From sequence record PQ471515.1: a DNA stretch of 64,000 nucleotides. The stretch is one strand, 5' to 3'. Both the position numbers and the translations under genes were made by a program. A model generated the notes under the pieces. That model was given only the letters and a program-made list of their open reading frames with translations. It was not told where the DNA came from and searched no databases. This document shows positions 1 through 62,541 of the stretch, in pieces. Position 1 is the first letter of the stretch. Each line of letters begins with the position of its first letter.

Positions 1-412
1 ATGAAACCCGTTAGATGATGGCATAGTTTGAACCACTCACGGCAATGCGGCTGTATAAAGAACTCCAATAGGATAAAGAGAGTTCCTCGATAGACATATA
101 AGGATCGCACCTTACCAATTATCTAAGGGAGATTTCATGAGAAATTTGCGGTCGTAATTTATACAAAATAGTTGCGTCCAAAATTCGTGAAATCAAATAC
201 AAGTACTGGTCATATGGTATTTGTATTATGTGTCGGGATGTTTAAGACCGACGACCGTTGCTACAAGAACCGCGATAGAGAGAAACAGAGCAACCCGCTT
301 TCGCCTCGTAAGAGAATTCGTGATATGAACTATGTGAAGGCCACCAGCGTCAAACTTTTTTGTTCTTTCCCCTGCGGGGGGATGAAATATGCTCAAGCAA
401 ACCCCGTCAATA
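1..412 (+). ncRNA. Candidate large structured non-coding RNA, copy A (5' part lies upstream of the window)
   Basis: Block-wise homology to 49838-50310. Stems include CCCGTTAG 7-14/CTAAGGG 123-129, GAACTC 60-65/GAGTTC 80-85, GATTTCATGA 131-140/TCGTGAAATC 185-194, GTCGG 232-236/CCGAC 248-252 and 363-372/377-386. G-U wobbles occur on the + strand. Confidence 0.65.
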
Positions 413-440
413 TTAATTAAAACAAATCATAGTACTTTCG

Positions 441-469
441 TTGAATTAGACATGCGAAGCGTGTATAAT
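441..469 (+). promoter_or_regulatory. sigma70-type promoter TTGAAT-N17-TATAAT
   Basis: TTGAAT 441-446 and TATAAT 464-469, just upstream of the first gene. Confidence 0.6.
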
Positions 470-530
470 TCGACTGGTGTTGATGAAGTCAACGCCATGT
501 ACAGTCATTGATGTTTCCATAGGAATAATG

Positions 531-1073
531 ATGTCATTTATTAAAAAATCTAAAAGCGTCACTTATAAAACACTAGAATTTGTTGATTCAGACAATCAGA
601 ACCAAGACCAAGAGAATTTTACTGGTTTTGTTGTGATTAAAGAAAAGGGATGTATTTCGTACATCAAAGAGTTGCAGTGCGGTTTTGAATTAACTTCCAT
701 TAAGTTATTCCCAACCAAGAAGCCTACAATTCTTAAAGCTCGTTATGGGAACTACTACGAAGAGCGTTATAGTAATAATCTAATCAGTGCGAAAGCACAT
801 ATCGTCAATGGAGAACTAGAAGGAGAATATAGAAAATTCAACCCACAAGGAAAATGTGTTTGGGTTAAATACTTCAATTCAGGAAATGATGTAACATCAG
901 AAATTATTGAGTTTTTAGGTTTAACATGTACCCTTGAAACTCTTCATGATTACAAATTTAATACTGAAGAAGAGTTTAATCTGATGATGCGTTATGGATC
1001 ACATTTTAAATTTTTATATGAATACAACATTGACAGTAGTACTTTTGATGACATAGTACTTAACTGTCTATAA
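531..1073 (+). CDS. Hypothetical protein with a MORN-like repeat and an EEEF C-terminal motif
   Basis: ORF track 477..1073; ATG 531 follows AGGA; contains GELEGEYRKFNPQGK. Confidence 0.65.
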   Translation: MSFIKKSKSVTYKTLEFVDSDNQNQDQENFTGFVVIKEKGCISYIKELQCGFELTSIKLFPTKKPTILKARYGNYYEERYSNNLISAKAHIVNGELEGEYRKFNPQGKCVWVKYFNSGNDVTSEIIEFLGLTCTLETLHDYKFNTEEEFNLMMRYGSHFKFLYEYNIDSSTFDDIVLNCL

Positions 1074-1089
1074 TCAAAGGAAATTATGT

Positions 1090-1614
1090 ATGTCGAAGAA
1101 GGATGCTTCGAAGAAAAAACAATCAGTACATTTCAGTACTGGAAAAGATAACTGGACTACTCCAAAGGATTTCTTTGAAGATTTGGATGAACTCTGGGAA
1201 TTTACACTAGATGCAGCATGTGTTAAAGAAACAGCATTGTGTGATAATTTCTTTACACCAGAAGATAATTCACTTGAACAGGACTGGGGAAACAATATCG
1301 TGTGGCTCAACCCACCGTACAGTGATTTGAAAACGTGGTTATCTAAGGCAGTTGATGCATATAACAAAGGTGCTACAGTACTGATTCTCGTACCATCAAG
1401 AACTGATACTATTGCGTTCCAGGACTATGCGTCTAAGTTATGCGACTGTATTTGTTTTATAAAAGGTCGCTTAAAGTTCGGTATCCCTGAAGAACCAGAT
1501 AAAAAGACGGATAGTGCTCCATTCCCTAGTTGTTTAATAGTACTGGATAAGTATTTGACTCCAGCTAAAATCAACTATCTTAAATCTATTGGTCAGGTGA
1601 TGAAGAACATATGA
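1090..1614 (+). CDS. Phage DNA N6-adenine methyltransferase (phage Dam-like family)
   Basis: NWTTPKDFF, FTLDAAC and VWLNPPYS (NPPY catalytic motif IV), plus LVPSRTDT. Confidence 0.9.
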   Translation: MSKKDASKKKQSVHFSTGKDNWTTPKDFFEDLDELWEFTLDAACVKETALCDNFFTPEDNSLEQDWGNNIVWLNPPYSDLKTWLSKAVDAYNKGATVLILVPSRTDTIAFQDYASKLCDCICFIKGRLKFGIPEEPDKKTDSAPFPSCLIVLDKYLTPAKINYLKSIGQVMKNI

Positions 1615-2144
1615 AAGAAACATGCGTAGTGACATTCGGAAGAATTAACCCAGTACATCGTGGTCATGGTTTAGTATTTGAAAAAGCTCAAGCACTACAA
1701 GAACAGTACAATGCGGATTTGAAAATATTCCTTAGCACCAGTACTGATGCCGTCAAAAACCCATTACCTCCTGAACTGAAAATGTACTATACAGAAGGAT
1801 TTTACCCATCTGTACAAGAAAATATCTATACAGAAGATAATCTGTTTGATATAATGAGAGAACTGGATGGAAAGTACTTAGATGTTCTTTTCATATGTGG
1901 TTCAGACAGACTTGAACCATTCCAAAAAACGCTTGACACGTACAATGGGAAGTTATATAATTTTTGTTCAATCAAGGCAGTTCAAGCTGGAATTGATCGA
2001 AATGTAAGTCGCTACAGTTCCACACAGATGCGTGAGTTTGCCAAGAATGAAGATTTTAATAGCTTCAGTACTTTTCTACCTGGTAATGATGATGCACTGA
2101 AAATTAAACTATTTGAAGATGTAATAAAATACATGAGGAAATAA
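1611..2144 (+). CDS. HxGH-family nucleotidyltransferase (cytidylyltransferase-like)
   Basis: TFGRINPVHRGH (HxGH), CGSDR and SSTQMR motifs. Confidence 0.8.
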   Translation: MKETCVVTFGRINPVHRGHGLVFEKAQALQEQYNADLKIFLSTSTDAVKNPLPPELKMYYTEGFYPSVQENIYTEDNLFDIMRELDGKYLDVLFICGSDRLEPFQKTLDTYNGKLYNFCSIKAVQAGIDRNVSRYSSTQMREFAKNEDFNSFSTFLPGNDDALKIKLFEDVIKYMRK

Positions 2145-2146
2145 CT

Positions 2147-2440
2147 ATGTCAGTACTGTTTAAAACTAACCCAGTACTTTGGGATCAGAATGAGGATTCG
2201 GGTTTCCGTTCAATCCATGTTGAATTCAAAGGTAATACGGTGGTTGCAATCATTGCAAACAAAACTTTAGGAAACTGGACTGCACAAGTTGTTCCTATGG
2301 GATATTCTTATACATCTGATGAAGTTGCGTTTCTGGCTGAATTATATAGTCAAACACCATTCATCATCAATGTTTTAGAGCGTAGTGATAAGTTAACACA
2401 TGACGAAGTAATTGACTTCCTGGCGAACTTACATGTCTGA
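2147..2440 (+). CDS. Hypothetical protein
   Basis: Tightly packed + strand ORF; no motif recognised. Confidence 0.65.
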   Translation: MSVLFKTNPVLWDQNEDSGFRSIHVEFKGNTVVAIIANKTLGNWTAQVVPMGYSYTSDEVAFLAELYSQTPFIINVLERSDKLTHDEVIDFLANLHV

Positions 2441-2720
2441 TGATTCGAATCTAACAGGTTATTTTTTACAAGAATCAATGATCAAATTCAGTGAACATTT
2501 TCCAGTACTAGATGGTGTGGAGATGTGGCATGTAAAACCACTCTTCCACACTTTCAGCAAAGAGCACAAAATGTTATTGACTGAGGCTTGTAAATCGAAT
2601 AAAATATGCCAAATCAAGATTGGTGTAAATGTCTACAAAGGATTAGTCATCTTTTTTGACAACAACAGCAACTACTTTTATATTGTTAAGGAGCATTACG
2701 TTGACAAATACAAATACTAA
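2433..2720 (+). CDS. Hypothetical protein
   Basis: ORF track 2412..2720; ATG 2433 overlaps the upstream stop. Confidence 0.65.
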   Translation: MSDDSNLTGYFLQESMIKFSEHFPVLDGVEMWHVKPLFHTFSKEHKMLLTEACKSNKICQIKIGVNVYKGLVIFFDNNSNYFYIVKEHYVDKYKY

Positions 2721-3312
2721 TACATACTTTCGTTATCTTCGCCTAGGGCTTTCCCTACGCCCAATCCGTGGTAAGTGTGATTCACTTGCTGATTTGGATT
2801 ATGCATATGCATTACATTGTGATGGTGTTCAATATGTATTAGGTGACTATGGCACATTCGAAGAATCCAATGACAGTTCAGAAATTATTGCTGGTGTTGC
2901 TAACCTTAACAACATTGCCAATAGTTCTCGTCATGAAATCGTTCTTGAAATTCAGAACTTCATTGAGAAAAATACTGGCAAGCGTACATGGTCATATGTC
3001 GGTACTGATGCACAAATGTCAATCGCATTTGGTAACGAAGATGGTTATGTAGCACAACTTATTATGGATTTCGAATCAGAAGAGAAGTTCCTAGAATACA
3101 AGGAAAAAATCATCCAATCCTTGTTGCAAATGGGTATTCCTGAAGATCGTATGCCTGAAATTCAAAGCATTGATGAGTTTGTTCTTATCCCATCTGATGA
3201 AAAATATGATGCGATGTTTACAGCACTGAACATTCCTGGTGTAGTTGTTGAGTACTTCGATGATGGTGATGGTGACATTTACCTAGATCTCGACGACGAT
3301 GATGATGAATAA
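2701..3312 (+). CDS. Acidic hypothetical protein, probable TTG start
   Basis: In-frame TTG at 2701 preceded by AAGGAG; Asp-rich C-terminus LDLDDDDDE. Confidence 0.7.
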   Translation: MTNTNTNTYFRYLRLGLSLRPIRGKCDSLADLDYAYALHCDGVQYVLGDYGTFEESNDSSEIIAGVANLNNIANSSRHEIVLEIQNFIEKNTGKRTWSYVGTDAQMSIAFGNEDGYVAQLIMDFESEEKFLEYKEKIIQSLLQMGIPEDRMPEIQSIDEFVLIPSDEKYDAMFTALNIPGVVVEYFDDGDGDIYLDLDDDDDE

Positions 3313-48282: not shown

Positions 48283-48894
48283 ATGTCAAAATATCAGGTC
48301 TACTATGTTGCCAAACTATCACTTCTTGATGAGTTAAATCAAAGAAGTACACAGATGAAACGCTATACATATAACGGTGTTACTTTCCGATACTTCCCAC
48401 AAAAAGTACTTACATTCGTTAAGAATTGTAAATGCGTTGCGTGTGGTATTGAAGCCACTGAAGTTCGCATTGAGCGTTCACATAGCACAGATCCGGTATA
48501 TGGTAAACCTCACTTAAATGTCTATGCAGTTTGTGGTCTATATGAAGTACTGATGACAGTAGATCATAACCAACTAGCATCTAAGGGTGGACCTGATTTA
48601 GAGTCAAATTACAACACCATGTGTTCACGTTGTAACAGTCTTCGTTCTAATAAAACTGAATCAGTAGATGAATTCCTGGAAAAAGTTAAGGGTAGAAATC
48701 TACTGGAAGAGCATATGAATGATTTTTTCAATAAAGATAAGAAGAAATCTAAAATTCCTACTCCAGAAGAATTGGAAGAACGCCGTTTACGTACAGAACT
48801 ATGGGAAACCGACCATATATGGCATGTTCGTGATTTTGGACGACATATGAAAGCTCTAAAAAAAGAACAAAAGAAATTGAATAATCACAATTAA
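48283..48894 (+). CDS. HNH endonuclease
   Basis: CVACG, TVDH...SKGG...NYNTMCSRCNSLRSNK. Confidence 0.85.
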   Translation: MSKYQVYYVAKLSLLDELNQRSTQMKRYTYNGVTFRYFPQKVLTFVKNCKCVACGIEATEVRIERSHSTDPVYGKPHLNVYAVCGLYEVLMTVDHNQLASKGGPDLESNYNTMCSRCNSLRSNKTESVDEFLEKVKGRNLLEEHMNDFFNKDKKKSKIPTPEELEERRLRTELWETDHIWHVRDFGRHMKALKKEQKKLNNHN

Positions 48895-49703: not shown

Positions 49704-49704
49704 C

Positions 49705-49732
49705 GGGACATAATACATCCTAGTGATATAAT
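49705..49732 (+). promoter_or_regulatory. Promoter GGGACA-N16-TATAAT with TG extended -10, firing into the non-coding element
   Basis: Conserved promoter family; no credible CDS for ~660 nt downstream. Confidence 0.7.
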
Positions 49733-49737
49733 GTATA

Positions 49738-50390
49738 TTGTAAAATGACAACGGACATTGAAAAATGGATAATGAGAACCTACTTCTCTTGAAAATGTAA
49801 AGGATAGATGAGCTTTACCGTTGTAGCGAACAGCAAAAGAAACCTGTTAGAGTACTGGCAATCAAACAAACACGAGATAAGACCACGAATCACGGCGACA
49901 CGGCTGTATAAAGAACTCCAATAAGCACACAGAGAGTTCCTAGATAGATGTATAAGGTTCGCACCTTACGAATTTGCTAAGGGAGTTCAAGGATTGTGGA
50001 CGCGATTTTACAAGAAAGTTGCGTCCAAAATTTGAGAACAGGTACTACTTTGATCGAATAGAGTTTAGTACTGAGTGCTGTTGATGAAAAGACCAGCGAC
50101 CGTTGCATATGACTGCGATAGAGAGAAACCGAGCAACCCGCTTTCGCTCTCTAAATTTTGGTACAGGAAAGATCCGTCCAAAATTTGAGAAATTCGCAAT
50201 TCGATAATATCCGATGCCATCATCGTCAAGAGAGACTTAATTGTCTCTTTTTTATTACCTTCATTCCCCTGCGGGGGGATGAAATAGTCCTCAACAAATC
50301 CCGTCAAGCTTTTAAAGTACATTATCATTTTCAGAAGGAACTAGTTTACGAAGTAAACGTAGTGACTTCTTGAGTTACGAGAGAACGAAG
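49738..50390 (+). ncRNA. Candidate large structured non-coding RNA, copy B (homology to copy A over ~49838-50310)
   Basis: ~690 nt CDS-free gap, upstream promoter, conserved blocks and compensatory stems relative to 1-412; 5' and 3' ends are inferred. Confidence 0.65.
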
Positions 50391-50393
50391 TGA

Positions 50394-61733: not shown

Positions 61734-61971
61734 AATTTATGGTCGCACTACTGGTTGTAAATTCTGCGACACTGCTAAAGCAGTATGTGAAAATAACAAA
61801 TTTGATATGGAGTTTATCGATATTGTTACCGCTGGTATTGATGGTGCTAAACTATCTGAACTATGTGGTGAGCCAGTACGACAGGTTCCACAAATTTTCG
61901 TAAACGATGTTTACGTTCCAGGTGGCTGTACTGGTTTCGTTGAAGGTCTTAAAGAAGGTCGCTGGAATTAA
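61723..61971 (+). CDS. Glutaredoxin (NrdC/NrdH-like)
   Basis: CKFC active site; VPQIF..D.YVPGG. Confidence 0.88.
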   Translation: MKVKIYGRTTGCKFCDTAKAVCENNKFDMEFIDIVTAGIDGAKLSELCGEPVRQVPQIFVNDVYVPGGCTGFVEGLKEGRWN

Positions 61972-62213
61972 TGAATATTGATAAAGTATCATCTCGTGCA
62001 AAACATTTAGCTGACACATTGGGTGTTGAATTTAAAATGCCTGATATGGAAGCTGCAAAAGTTAAAGCACAACGTAAAATTCACAAAATGAAAGAATACA
62101 CTACTAAGAAAGAACAGTACGATAAAGCGGTTGCTTATATTATTGAAGCTTTCAGTAAAGATGATATTTTGGCATTCATCGCTTCAGTAGAGGTTTCGAG
62201 CAACCCTAAATAA
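61971..62213 (+). CDS. Small hypothetical protein
   Basis: TAATG overlap with the upstream gene. Confidence 0.7.
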   Translation: MNIDKVSSRAKHLADTLGVEFKMPDMEAAKVKAQRKIHKMKEYTTKKEQYDKAVAYIIEAFSKDDILAFIASVEVSSNPK

Positions 62214-62258
62214 TAATGAAGAACACAAGTTCTTCGTAACAATTTGGGAGATACTATT

Positions 62259-62501
62259 ATGCTCAGTTTTCGTGAACAATTAGCAAAAGGCCAATTCGCT
62301 GCTAAAGCTCAAACATCCATTCCTAAAAAGTCTGCTTTCTTAGGGACGATTACAGAAGATGGTTATTGTGATTATGATGCACCAGAAGATTCATGGTACA
62401 TTACGAAAGACACAAAACGTGGTAATAGACTTCACAAAAGTACCATTGCTCGCAAACAACGAAAAGAATTGAAAAAAATTCGATTCGGTGAAGAAGAATA
62501 A
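62259..62501 (+). CDS. Small basic hypothetical protein
   Basis: GGAG before ATG 62259. Confidence 0.7.
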   Translation: MLSFREQLAKGQFAAKAQTSIPKKSAFLGTITEDGYCDYDAPEDSWYITKDTKRGNRLHKSTIARKQRKELKKIRFGEEE

Positions 62502-62511
62502 AATATAAATT

Positions 62512-62541
62512 AAGGACTCTGATTACAGAGTCCTTTCTTTT
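62512..62541 (+). terminator. Rho-independent terminator
   Basis: AAGGACTCTG/CAGAGTCCTT followed by a T tract. Confidence 0.85.

What the first reader, a model, noticed from the sequence alone, without database searches (positions are those of the whole stretch)
1..412. Copy A of the structured element, followed by its own downstream promoter
Seen: homology to copy B runs right to base 1, so the element starts upstream of the window. The predicted layout is a multiloop closed by 7-14/123-129 holding three hairpins (39-43/50-54, 60-65/80-85, 99-103/110-114). It is followed by a long stem 131-140/185-194, hairpins 196-227 and 232-252, a 257-304 region where GTTGC/GCAAC and GCGA/TCGC pairings interleave (possible pseudoknot), and the GC-rich hairpin 363-386. 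The next gene has a separate TTGAAT-N17-TATAAT promoter (441-469), and the genes flanking the two copies are unrelated. Inference: the element is a stand-alone trans-acting RNA or a mobile structured element, not a riboswitch tied to one gene.
Basis: partly seen in the sequence, partly recalled or inferred. Interest (0 to 1): 0.85.

Follow-up and report, generated by a model that had tools for sequence, protein, structure and literature searches.

The report
New large structured jumbo-phage RNA family
Bases 1-412 are most of one of four copies of a previously undescribed, roughly 500-base, intricately folded non-coding RNA gene that giant "Rak2-like" phages carry at regular intervals around their genomes and that small bacterial defence islands have captured, so it is probably a new functional RNA whose job is still unknown.

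Summary
The element is real. The window is Escherichia phage Turkey3 (62001-126000). Copy A lies in a 683-nt gene-free gap that starts 153 nt upstream of the window. Turkey3 has exactly four copies, all on the + strand.

Related phages (Asterius-, Mimas-, Eneladusvirus and uncultivated relatives) have 4-5 co-oriented copies spaced 63-86 kb apart. No Rfam family, tRNA or tmRNA matches.

On 44 distinct sequences, a 15-helix fold with three pseudoknots is 96.4% paired, and 53 of 79 pairs show compensatory changes. Three do not: 7-14/123-129, 39-43/50-54 and GCGA/TCGC.

It is a stand-alone RNA gene with its own sigma-70-type promoter. It is not a riboswitch, not a UTR and not coding.

Two new findings:
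- Intact, structure-preserving copies sit in about 10-kb integrative islands of Serratia, Silvania and E. coli that carry defence cargo and no recognised replication or packaging genes. There were at least two independent captures.
- Two 11-12-nt direct repeats flank a conserved 3' hairpin module and co-vary by identity.

Function is unproven. I favour a cis-acting, origin-like role of the transcript (about 0.3) over a trans-acting RNA particle (about 0.3). Interest is high.

The parts
1..353 (+). Copy A, core of the structured RNA. The window edge cuts its 5' end: about 55 nt of the core and about 65 nt of leader lie upstream, at record 61881-62000.
   Evidence: nhmmer hit, alignment, covariation.
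8..42 (+). Helix H4, CCGU 8-11 / ACGG 39-42. It encloses a variable hairpin.
Evidence: 100% paired in 44 sequences.
45..97 (+). Pseudoknot PK3, AUG 45-47 / CAU 95-97.
   Evidence: AUG/CAU, ACA/UGU and AUA/UAU variants; 2 of 3 pairs compensatory.
60..85 (+). Hairpin H5, GAACUC 60-65 / GAGUUC 80-85.
   Evidence: 6 of 6 pairs show changes on both sides.
99..114 (+). Hairpin H6, UAAGG 99-103 / CCUUA 110-114.
   Evidence: GAGU/ACUC variants.
131..194 (+). Long stem 131-139/186-194. It encloses an optional recurrent module (161-178, AUACAAAAUAGUUGCGUC).
   Evidence: Compensatory variants read. The module is found only inside element copies and occurs 0-2 times per copy.
196..227 (+). Hairpin 196-202/221-227 plus 204-207/216-219. 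Its loop 209-215 pairs with 323-329 (pseudoknot PK2, or an intermolecular kissing contact).
   Evidence: 10 of 11 stem pairs and 5 of 7 PK2 pairs are compensatory. Each paralog has its own 6-7-nt pair.
232..252 (+). Hairpin GUCGG 232-236 / CCGAC 248-252.
   Evidence: GUAGU/ACUAC variants.
257..329 (+). 3' domain, the part kept in the most distant relatives. It contains PK1 (GUUGC 257-261 / GCAAC 290-294), Pa (271-275/318-322), Pb (278-282/298-302), Pc (305-308/311-314) and the PK2 3' strand (323-329).
   Evidence: These helices are 96.4-100% paired, and 19 of their 25 pairs are compensatory. The domain is conserved in the distant subfamily.
343..353 (+). Direct repeat R1 (ACCAGCGUCAA).
   Evidence: Co-varies by identity with R2.
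363..386 (+). GC-rich extended hairpin of the 3' module (363-365/384-386 and 367-372/377-382).
   Evidence: Fold at -13.9 kcal/mol. Conserved in all copies. Found only in the four copies in the genome.
401..410 (+). Direct repeat R2 (ACCCCGUCAA). This is the end of conservation.
441..469 (+). Separate sigma-70-type promoter (TTGAAT-N17-TATAAT) for the next gene (CDS 531-1073). It is not part of the element.
   Evidence: annotation; PHROG 16210.
49705..49732 (+). Copy B promoter, GGGACA-N16-TGATATAAT.
   Evidence: aligned with the copy A promoter.
49777..50229 (+). Copy B core RNA. It has two optional modules (50008-50025 and 50161-50178) and ends in R1 (50219-50229).
50228..50255 (+). Copy B inserted hairpin plus U-run. 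It looks like an intrinsic terminator and is absent from copy A.
   Evidence: Fold at -10.8 kcal/mol, z = -3.7. The stem covaries across copies. Present in 37 of 78 family members. The simple scan did not call it.
50260..50307 (+). Copy B 3' module: extended GC hairpin 50260-50269/50274-50283, then R2 at 50298-50307.

Best explanation
SHOWN. Window 1-412 is the larger part of copy A of a four-member gene family in phage Turkey3. The copies lie at record positions about 61.9, 111.8, 196.3 and 309.6 kb, all on the + strand. The family encodes a previously undescribed non-coding RNA.
- Each copy is a separate transcription unit.
- Each has a sigma-70-type promoter with an extended -10 (TGnTAtAAT).
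- A variable leader follows, then a core of about 410-450 nt. The core folds into at least 15 helices, including three pseudoknots.
- The core ends in an 11-nt repeat (R1).
- In about half of all family members an intrinsic-terminator-like hairpin comes next.
- A conserved GC-rich hairpin module follows.
- The copy ends with a second copy of the repeat (R2).

G-U pairs at conserved positions show that the + strand is the folded strand.

The family is kept in 4-5 co-oriented, regularly spaced copies in Rak2-like jumbo phages. It is also kept, with its fold intact, as a single copy in small integrative islands of Enterobacterales.

INFERRED (mechanism). The RNA acts as a folded molecule that is made early by host RNA polymerase and is recognised by jumbo-phage machinery. 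My favoured reading (about 0.3) is that each copy is a cis-acting, origin-like chromosomal element. In that reading the structured transcript, together with the 3' hairpin module and the R1/R2 repeats, promotes RNA-primed or R-loop-type initiation by the phage's T4-like replisome. This is analogous in logic to ColE1 RNA II or T4 oriF/oriG. The islands would carry one copy so that an infecting jumbo phage replicates and spreads them. About 0.9 of my confidence attaches to 'stand-alone structured ncRNA gene family', and far less to the mechanism.
For: Identity:
- Four copies found by nhmmer over the whole genome.
- Homologs with 4-5 places per genome in 62-70 phage records.
- No Rfam, tRNA or tmRNA match.
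- RNAalifold predicts 55 pairs, 34 with compensatory changes.
- My 79-pair structure is 96.4% paired, and 53 pairs change on both sides. 0 of 500 shuffles reach this. Slid controls give 38-43%.
- G-U predominates at columns 397/418 and 320/331.
- No protein family matches the internal ORFs.
- Promoters are found for copies A and B. Copy C lies between two minus-strand genes and has its own TGcTATAAT.

Cis or origin-like reading:
- All copies are co-oriented in every genome.
- Gaps are 63-81 kb in a 366-kb genome (P of such evenness about 0.0004) and 44-86 kb in Yen9-04.
- Positional ortholog clades are kept across genera.
- R1 and R2 co-vary by identity within each copy: UU 52, CC 26, 0 discordant, with 5 concordant changes on the tree. 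In addition CGUCA becomes CGACA, UGUCA, CUUCA or CGAAG in both repeats together. This points to a same-locus constraint.
- The 3' module occurs nowhere else in the genome.
- The islands carry intact copies with 96-99% of pairs kept and 15-19 compensatory differences from copy A. They have no recognised replication or packaging genes.
- There were at least two independent captures.
- The phage encodes a T4-type replisome, RNase H and UvsW.
Against: - There are no expression, end-mapping or replication data.
- The fold is far more elaborate than needed for known primer or R-loop origins. That is more typical of ribozymes, RNP scaffolds or self-assembling RNAs.
- In 37 of 78 members a terminator-like hairpin sits between the core and the conserved 3' module. 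So it is unclear whether the module is transcribed with the core.
- A sigma-70 promoter in integrated islands would fire an origin constitutively unless phage factors are required.
- The spacing statistics rest on syntenic, non-independent genomes.
- The identity coupling of R1 and R2 has no demonstrated mechanism.
- In A-type copies the promoter is followed at once by a hairpin plus U-run, which is hard to reconcile with efficient transcription from that promoter.
Confidence: 0.55

Rival explanations
1. Trans-acting folded RNA: an RNP scaffold, a ribozyme or a self-assembling RNA particle like ROOL, GOLLD or OLE. It would be made in quantity from several gene copies and act on host or phage components. 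Islands would express their copy as a decoy or competitor against jumbo phages, or for their own benefit.
For: - The fold is elaborate, pseudoknotted and covariation-supported.
- Each copy has its own promoter and often a terminator.
- The paralog-specific 6-7-bp loop-to-distal pairing PK2 could be an intermolecular kissing contact. A ROOL contact was first read as a tertiary contact from covariation in the same way (PMC12286853).
- In the islands the element sits in a moron-like position beside defence cargo.
- The island copies keep the fold.
Against: - It does not explain the regular spacing, strict co-orientation and long-term positional stability.
- It does not explain the within-copy identity coupling of R1 and R2.
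- No partner protein is shared between islands and phage.
Confidence: 0.3
2. Cis-acting transcription element: the nascent RNA modifies RNA polymerase (processive antitermination, like HK022 put or EAR) or insulates long transcription units. Each copy would head a block of about 70 kb.
For: - The copies are co-oriented with most genes and regularly spaced.
- A terminator-like hairpin lies directly downstream in half the members.
- A conserved sigma-70 promoter block follows many copies.
Against: - Copy C is followed by minus-strand genes.
- In the islands the element runs convergently into the 3' end of the CI-like gene.
- Downstream genes have their own promoters.
- Known elements of this kind are about 70-120 nt.
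Confidence: 0.07
3. A mobile non-autonomous element (MITE-like, intron-like or homing) that has spread within and between genomes. R1 and R2 would be a target-site duplication around an inserted 3' module.
For: - Direct repeats flank the 3' module.
- The element was transferred into bacterial islands at least twice.
- The four Asteriusvirus copies cluster together.
- An HNH endonuclease gene lies 0.8 kb upstream of copy B.
Against: - Paralogs form positional clades across genera, which means old and stable sites.
- No empty site and no copy lacking the module appears among more than 100 members.
- A single ancient insertion would not give parallel later changes in R1 and R2.
- No transposase or reverse transcriptase is associated.
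- Strong purifying selection acts on the RNA fold.
Confidence: 0.05
4. An ordinary cis-regulatory leader or riboswitch of the downstream gene, the 3' end of the upstream CDS, or a small protein-coding region.
For: - Some GenBank records annotate small hypothetical ORFs across the region.
- Turkey3 itself annotates a 52-aa minus-strand ORF inside copy B.
Against: - The upstream CDS ends 153 nt before the window and is followed by a promoter.
- Downstream genes differ between copies and have their own promoters.
- Frame-breaking indels separate the copies, and no protein family is hit.
- Compensatory base-pair changes run throughout.
Confidence: 0.03

Closest known systems
ROOL and GOLLD RNAs (large ornate phage and prophage RNAs; Rfam families; cryo-EM nanocages, PMC12286853)
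   Same: - 500-800-nt, multi-pseudoknotted RNAs.
- Strong covariation.
- Encoded by phages and prophage-like elements.
- Function unknown.
- Loop-loop contacts seen as covariation.
   Different: - No sequence or structure match at Rfam E <= 10.
- Hosts are Enterobacterales jumbo phages rather than Firmicutes or rumen phages.
- Not next to tRNA arrays.
- 4-5 regularly spaced co-oriented copies per genome.
- The identity-coupled repeats R1 and R2.
ColE1 RNA II, and T4 oriF/oriG origin transcripts (my own knowledge; not tested here)
   Same: - A promoter-driven transcript of about 500 nt whose folding would govern formation of a primer or R-loop at its 3' end.
- G- and C-runs near the 3' end.
- Several origins per T4-type genome.
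- The phage encodes RNase H and UvsW.
   Different: - No homology.
- The fold is much more complex and phylogenetically conserved.
- A terminator-like hairpin often precedes the 3' module.
- No replication evidence at all.
Cis elements shared by phage satellites and their helpers (P4 cos, PICI pac or ori; PICMI; the jumbo-phage satellite I55, PMC12595487, PMC10803314)
   Same: Small integrative islands with an integrase, a repressor switch and defence cargo, and without recognised structural or replication genes, carry a sequence otherwise specific to one virulent phage group.
   Different: - The shared element is a structured RNA gene, not a pac or cos site.
- No mobilisation has been shown.
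- The islands are unrelated to I55 and PICMI.
OLE RNA ribonucleoprotein
   Same: A large structured RNA. In the islands the RNA gene is linked to a gene for a 233-286-aa predicted membrane protein.
   Different: - No Rfam match.
- No homolog of the island membrane protein in the phage.
- The association is circumstantial.

Membership tests
Any Rfam 15 family (including ROOL, GOLLD, OLE, HEARO, RNase P, tmRNA, group I and II introns, hammerhead, 6S) | A covariance-model match at the gathering score, or at least at E <= 10. | tested here: not met
   There were 0 matches at gathering score in 64 kb. Only chance-level hits (E 2-9, 10-20 bits) appeared in the two intergenic regions.
tRNA / tmRNA | ARAGORN detection. 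| tested here: not met
   0 genes in the window.
Structured non-coding RNA (generic) | Helices kept through compensatory changes beyond shuffled and slid controls. | tested here: met
   96.4% paired; 53 of 79 pairs changed on both sides; 0 of 500 shuffles reach this; slid controls 38-43%.
Structured non-coding RNA (generic) | Own promoter, independence from neighbouring genes, and no coding signal. | tested here: met
   Promoters. Copy C lies between minus-strand genes. Flanking genes are unrelated and no protein family matches the internal ORFs.
Structured non-coding RNA (generic) | A discrete transcript observed. | not testable with these tools
   No transcriptome data were accessible.
Riboswitch / cis-regulatory leader | A constant position upstream of one functional class of genes. 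| tested here: not met
   Downstream genes differ (PHROG 16210 vs 35272). Minus-strand genes lie downstream of copy C. In the islands the element is convergent with cI.
Hammerhead ribozyme (considered because of CAGAUGAG-stem-CGA) | An invariant CUGANGA ... GAAA core. | tested here: not met
   U4 is A in all copies. The position equivalent to A14 is a covarying base pair (column 72: AU 34, UA 9). There is no Rfam hit.
RNA-primed / R-loop replication origin (ColE1 RNA II-like, T4 oriF/G-like) | Origin activity; an RNA-DNA hybrid at the 3' end; a primer 3' end. | not testable with these tools
   Only indirect support: spacing and co-orientation, the 3' module and R1/R2, and islands lacking recognised replication genes.
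Transposable / MITE-like element | Empty sites, variable positions, and a target duplication created at insertion. | tested here: not met
   Positional clades are conserved across genera. No member lacks the module and none has a single repeat. Direct repeats exist but evolve in parallel.
Phage satellite (for the bacterial islands) | An integrase plus regulatory switch, no structural genes, and a helper-specific cis element. | tested here: inconclusive
   The gene content fits. The element is the only link to the phages. Helper-dependent induction, replication and transfer were not testable.

The most novel reading that the evidence does not exclude
The element is a new kind of chromosomal replication or organisation signal. 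It would be a set of 4-5 evenly spaced, co-oriented 'RNA origins' in which a large pseudoknotted transcript, a hairpin module and two identity-coupled direct repeats cooperate to start DNA synthesis. The about 10-kb defence islands that carry one intact copy would be the first satellites of Rak2-like jumbo phages. They would get replicated and spread simply by owning this RNA gene.
Probability: 0.25. Interest if true: 0.92.

Novelty: categorically new. Interest (0 to 1): 0.82.

Why it matters
Large, conserved, pseudoknotted RNAs of unknown function are rare, and each new class has led to new biochemistry.

This one sits in well-studied, culturable coliphages. 121Q, PBECO4 and Sharanji grow on laboratory E. 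coli, so the RNA is immediately testable.

Three features tie an RNA fold to chromosome-scale behaviour and to phage-satellite-defence conflicts in a way not described before:
- The regular spacing.
- The repeats that co-vary by identity rather than by complementarity.
- The repeated capture by integrative defence islands.

If the islands are satellites, it would explain how minimal islands exploit virulent jumbo phages.

It also corrects annotation. Several GenBank records place spurious small ORFs on these loci.

Tried and rejected
1. Rfam at gathering and at permissive thresholds, and ARAGORN: nothing.
3. Pairing of the 5' GAUGAG motif with R1 or R2, and a search for any third strand complementary to R1/R2 by mutual information and by eye: no covarying partner. 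RNAalifold of the 3' region gives only local hairpins.
4. A hammerhead-like reading of CAGAUGAG-stem-CGA: the core positions are not conserved.
5. A small ORF starting at GGGGGGAUGAAA...: the frames differ between copies.
6. att site or target duplication at island borders: the element is internal to the islands.
7. Homologs of island proteins in the phage, as a possible RNP partner: none by tblastn.
8. Replication initiators in the islands: none recognised by Pfam.
9. Two exact-protein look-ups failed.
10. The distant subfamily was not found in any isolated phage.
11. Literature searches found no description of this RNA. A 2023 catalogue of viral structured-RNA candidates holds only motifs of 29-151 nt and may contain fragments. 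I did not check its supplements.
12. Five loci that matched a short DNA pattern (L047, L048, L056, L063, L067) are not family members by nhmmer.

Full report
**Where the window is.**
- Bases 1-3000 match Escherichia phage Turkey3 (PQ471515.1) positions 62001-65000 at 100%. Turkey3 is a 361-kb Rak2/121Q-like jumbo myovirus.
- In that record the finding lies in a 683-nt gene-free gap, record 61848-62530. The preceding CDS ends 153 nt before window base 1, and the next CDS starts at window 531.
- Copy B lies in a 690-nt gap, window 49704-50393.

**The observation.**
- Copies A and B are homologous. Once the upstream sequence is read, the homology runs from a shared promoter to about window 412.
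- The promoter is GAGACA or GGGACA-N16-TGATATAAT.
- The flanking genes belong to different PHROG families.
- So the 'would refute' condition, that the region is the 3' end of a CDS, is not met.

**Copy number.**
- I fetched the rest of the Turkey3 record in pieces and scanned it with a profile of six copies.
- There are exactly four copies, all on the + strand:

| Copy | Record position |
|---|---|
| A | 61849-62528 |
| B | 111708-112395 |
| C | 196225-196717 |
| D | 309534-310004 |

- Copy C lies between two minus-strand genes and has its own TGcTATAAT promoter and a hairpin plus U-run.
- Copy D follows the sigma-factor gene's terminator and a GACA-N16-GATACAAT promoter.
- The copies are therefore independent transcription units, not leaders of their neighbours.

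**Distribution.**
- blastn finds the element in 62-70 phage records, with 4-5 places per genome. The hosts are Escherichia, Salmonella, Erwinia, Yersinia, Serratia, Cronobacter, Pectobacterium, Xanthomonas and Klebsiella.
- Pattern scans added IMG/VR and metagenome loci. All 68 metagenome hits were confirmed by nhmmer.
- A distant subfamily in about 42%-GC contigs of uncultivated phages shares only the 3' domain and the 3' module. Its neighbours include a T4 baseplate protein, DHFR and DUF6267. It is absent from isolated phages.

**It is a folded RNA.**
- No Rfam family, tRNA or tmRNA matches.
- On 44 distinct members (alignment A3), RNAalifold predicts 55 pairs, 34 of them with compensatory changes.
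- A helix scan plus inspection gave a 15-helix, 79-pair model with three pseudoknots.
- The model is 96.4% paired, and 53 pairs change on both sides. None of 500 shuffles reaches this, and slid controls give 38-43%.
- G-U predominates at some conserved pairs, which fixes the + strand as the folded one.
- In window coordinates for copy A the supported helices are:

| Helix | Window coordinates |
|---|---|
| H3 | 5' strand just upstream of the window, with 50-54 |
| H4 | 8-11 / 39-42 |
| PK3 | 45-47 / 95-97 |
| H5 | 60-65 / 80-85 |
| H6 | 99-103 / 110-114 |
| Long stem | 131-139 / 186-194 |
| Hairpin | 196-227 |
| PK2 (loop 209-215) | 209-215 / 323-329 |
| Hairpin | 232-252 |
| PK1 | 257-261 / 290-294 |
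| Pa | 271-275 / 318-322 |
| Pb | 278-282 / 298-302 |
| Pc | 305-308 / 311-314 |
| GC hairpin | 363-386 |

- ORFs inside the element hit no protein family, and their frames are broken between copies.

**Architecture of a copy.** The parts, in order, are:
- A promoter and a variable leader.
- A 5' domain.
- One or two optional copies of a recurrent module, UUUGUACAAUAUAGAUCCGUCCAAAAUUUGA. It occurs 0, 1 or 2 times per copy and is found only inside element copies in the genome.
- The 3' domain, a three-way junction locked by PK1.
- Repeat R1.
- In 37 of 78 members, an inserted hairpin plus U-run whose stem covaries.
- A strong extended hairpin, CUUCAUUCCCC-UGC-GGGGGGAUGAAG.
- About 20 single-stranded nucleotides.
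- Repeat R2.

Conservation stops after R2. An AT-rich stretch follows, and often a conserved hairpin plus sigma-70 promoter for the next genes.

**An unexplained feature.**
- R1 is A-Y-C-A-N-CGUCA-R and R2 is A-Y-C-N-CGUCA-R. They are direct repeats 45-125 nt apart that change together.
- The Y position is U/U in 52 sequences and C/C in 26, never mixed. There are five concordant changes on a tree built without these columns.
- CGUCA has become CGACA, UGUCA, CUUCA or CGAAG in both repeats of the same copy.
- Paralogs within one genome differ, so the constraint acts within a locus.
- I found no third, complementary partner.
- Identity coupling rather than complementarity is not what RNA helices produce. 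It suggests one of these: a DNA-level requirement, an RNA-DNA requirement (the same RNA segment able to pair at two template sites), two isoforms that need the same 3' end, or repeated homogenisation.

**Genome-scale pattern.**
- In every genome all copies share one orientation.
- Where all five were captured, the gaps are 67, 80, 81, 63 and 75 kb in a 366-kb genome. The chance of so large a minimum gap is about 0.0004.
- In Yen9-04 the gaps are 69, 81, 86, 74 and 44 kb (about 0.02).
- These genomes are syntenic, so this is one ancestral arrangement, not many observations.
- In the tree, the Mimas- and Eneladusvirus copies group by genomic position across genera, which means old and stable paralogs.
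- The four Asteriusvirus copies group with each other, although A and C are syntenic with the 30-kb and 174-kb copies of other genera. This suggests homogenisation within that lineage.

**Bacterial copies.** Four hits in bacterial assemblies, and 2 of 5,426 complete E. coli genomes, are full-length members. Their contexts are:

| Host | Island context |
|---|---|
| Serratia fonticola | rof \| RNA \| ParB/RepB-like x2 \| large serine recombinase |
| Silvania | serine recombinase \| RNA \| CI-like (S24) \| HTH_35 \| membrane protein \| LprI-like \| resolvase \| DarT-DarG-UvrD |
| Three further genomes | tyrosine integrase \| TIR plus STAND NTPase \| resolvase \| LprI-like \| membrane protein \| HTH_35 \| CI-like \| RNA \| thiM |
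| E. coli LR-29-1 | an island next to ffs (one search covers its proteins) |

- These are integrative islands of about 10 kb with variable defence cargo and no recognised replication, packaging or structural genes.
- Their proteins have no homolog in Turkey3.
- Their RNA copies keep 96-99% of the pairs, with 15-19 compensatory differences from copy A. They also have promoters. So they are functional RNA genes, not debris.
- Most island copies form their own clade with one phage copy. The E. coli copy is instead 80.6% identical to the 174-kb copy of Serratia phage BF. That makes at least two captures.

**Interpretation.**
- Firmly supported: this is a new family of stand-alone, independently transcribed, highly structured RNA genes.
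- The function is not shown.
- The regular spacing, co-orientation, positional stability, locus-internal identity coupling and capture by minimal islands make me favour a cis-acting, origin-like role of the transcript for the phage's T4-type replisome. Under this reading the islands would be satellites that borrow it. I give this about 0.3.
- A trans-acting RNA particle or RNP, in the manner of ROOL, GOLLD or OLE (PMC12286853), is about equally likely. It fits the ornate fold and the paralog-specific kissing-type pairing PK2.
- Processive antitermination, a mobile element, a riboswitch and coding are much less likely, for the reasons listed under the rivals.
- I found no publication describing this RNA. 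Satellites of jumbo phages have a recent, unrelated precedent in Pseudomonas (PMC12595487).

Noticed in passing
window 343-353 and 401-410 (copy A); 50219-50229 and 50298-50307 (copy B): Direct repeats R1 and R2 flank the 3' hairpin module. They co-vary by identity, never discordantly, across 78 sequences and a distant subfamily. No complementary partner was found.
   Followed up: partly
L001 2847-2912 (record 61846-61911, just upstream of the window): In A-type copies the promoter is followed at once by a 12-bp hairpin plus U7. The hairpin covaries in GAP32, BF and XbC2. It may be the upstream gene's terminator overlapping the promoter, or a 5' attenuator. In copy D the order is terminator, then promoter.
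   Followed up: partly
window 50065-50223 (-): The annotated 52-aa hypothetical CDS XMR01158 lies inside copy B on the opposite strand. It hits no protein family and overlaps covarying helices, so it is probably a spurious call. Several related GenBank records carry 4-5 such ORFs on these loci.
   Followed up: partly
window 161-178, 50008-50025, 50161-50178: A recurrent optional module of about 30 nt (GUACA..AUAG.UCCGUC within an AAAUUU/AAAUUU stem) is inserted at two alternative places. It occurs 0-2 times per copy. Its GAUCC and GUUGC variants have no evident partner.
   Followed up: partly
L022 20225-20717, L024 33534-34004 and tree: The four Asteriusvirus paralogs cluster together rather than with their syntenic counterparts in other genera. 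This suggests gene conversion among copies 50-113 kb apart.
   Followed up: no
L088, L093, L098, L115, L117, L118, L126, L127, L138: A distant subfamily in about 42%-GC uncultivated phage contigs has an unrelated 5' domain. It keeps the same 3' domain, hairpin module and R1/R2, with the repeats as ACCAACGAAG and ACCACGAAG.
   Followed up: partly
L140, L144-L146, L141, L147: A family of integrative islands of about 10 kb in Enterobacterales. Their content is an integrase, a CI-like/HTH_35 switch, a membrane protein, an LprI-like protein, a small resolvase, DUF2188, and variable cargo such as DarTG, TIR-STAND and DUF4326/DUF488/dual-OB. They insert at thiM, ffs, rof/tilS and a miaB-like gene.
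   Followed up: partly
window 48283-48894 (+): An HNH endonuclease gene lies 0.8 kb upstream of copy B. No link to the element was established.
   Followed up: no
downstream of many copies, e.g. L005 about 2100-2160 and L010: A conserved block, AACGAAAATTCTTTGACATTCGAAGAATGGCAA (a hairpin around a TTGACA -35), follows the element in many genomes. It is probably an early promoter with a regulatory hairpin.
   Followed up: no
L147 9960-10030: Three TATCGATCGTT-type repeats lie 400 nt downstream of the RNA in the E. coli island. They look like operators or iterons.
   Followed up: no
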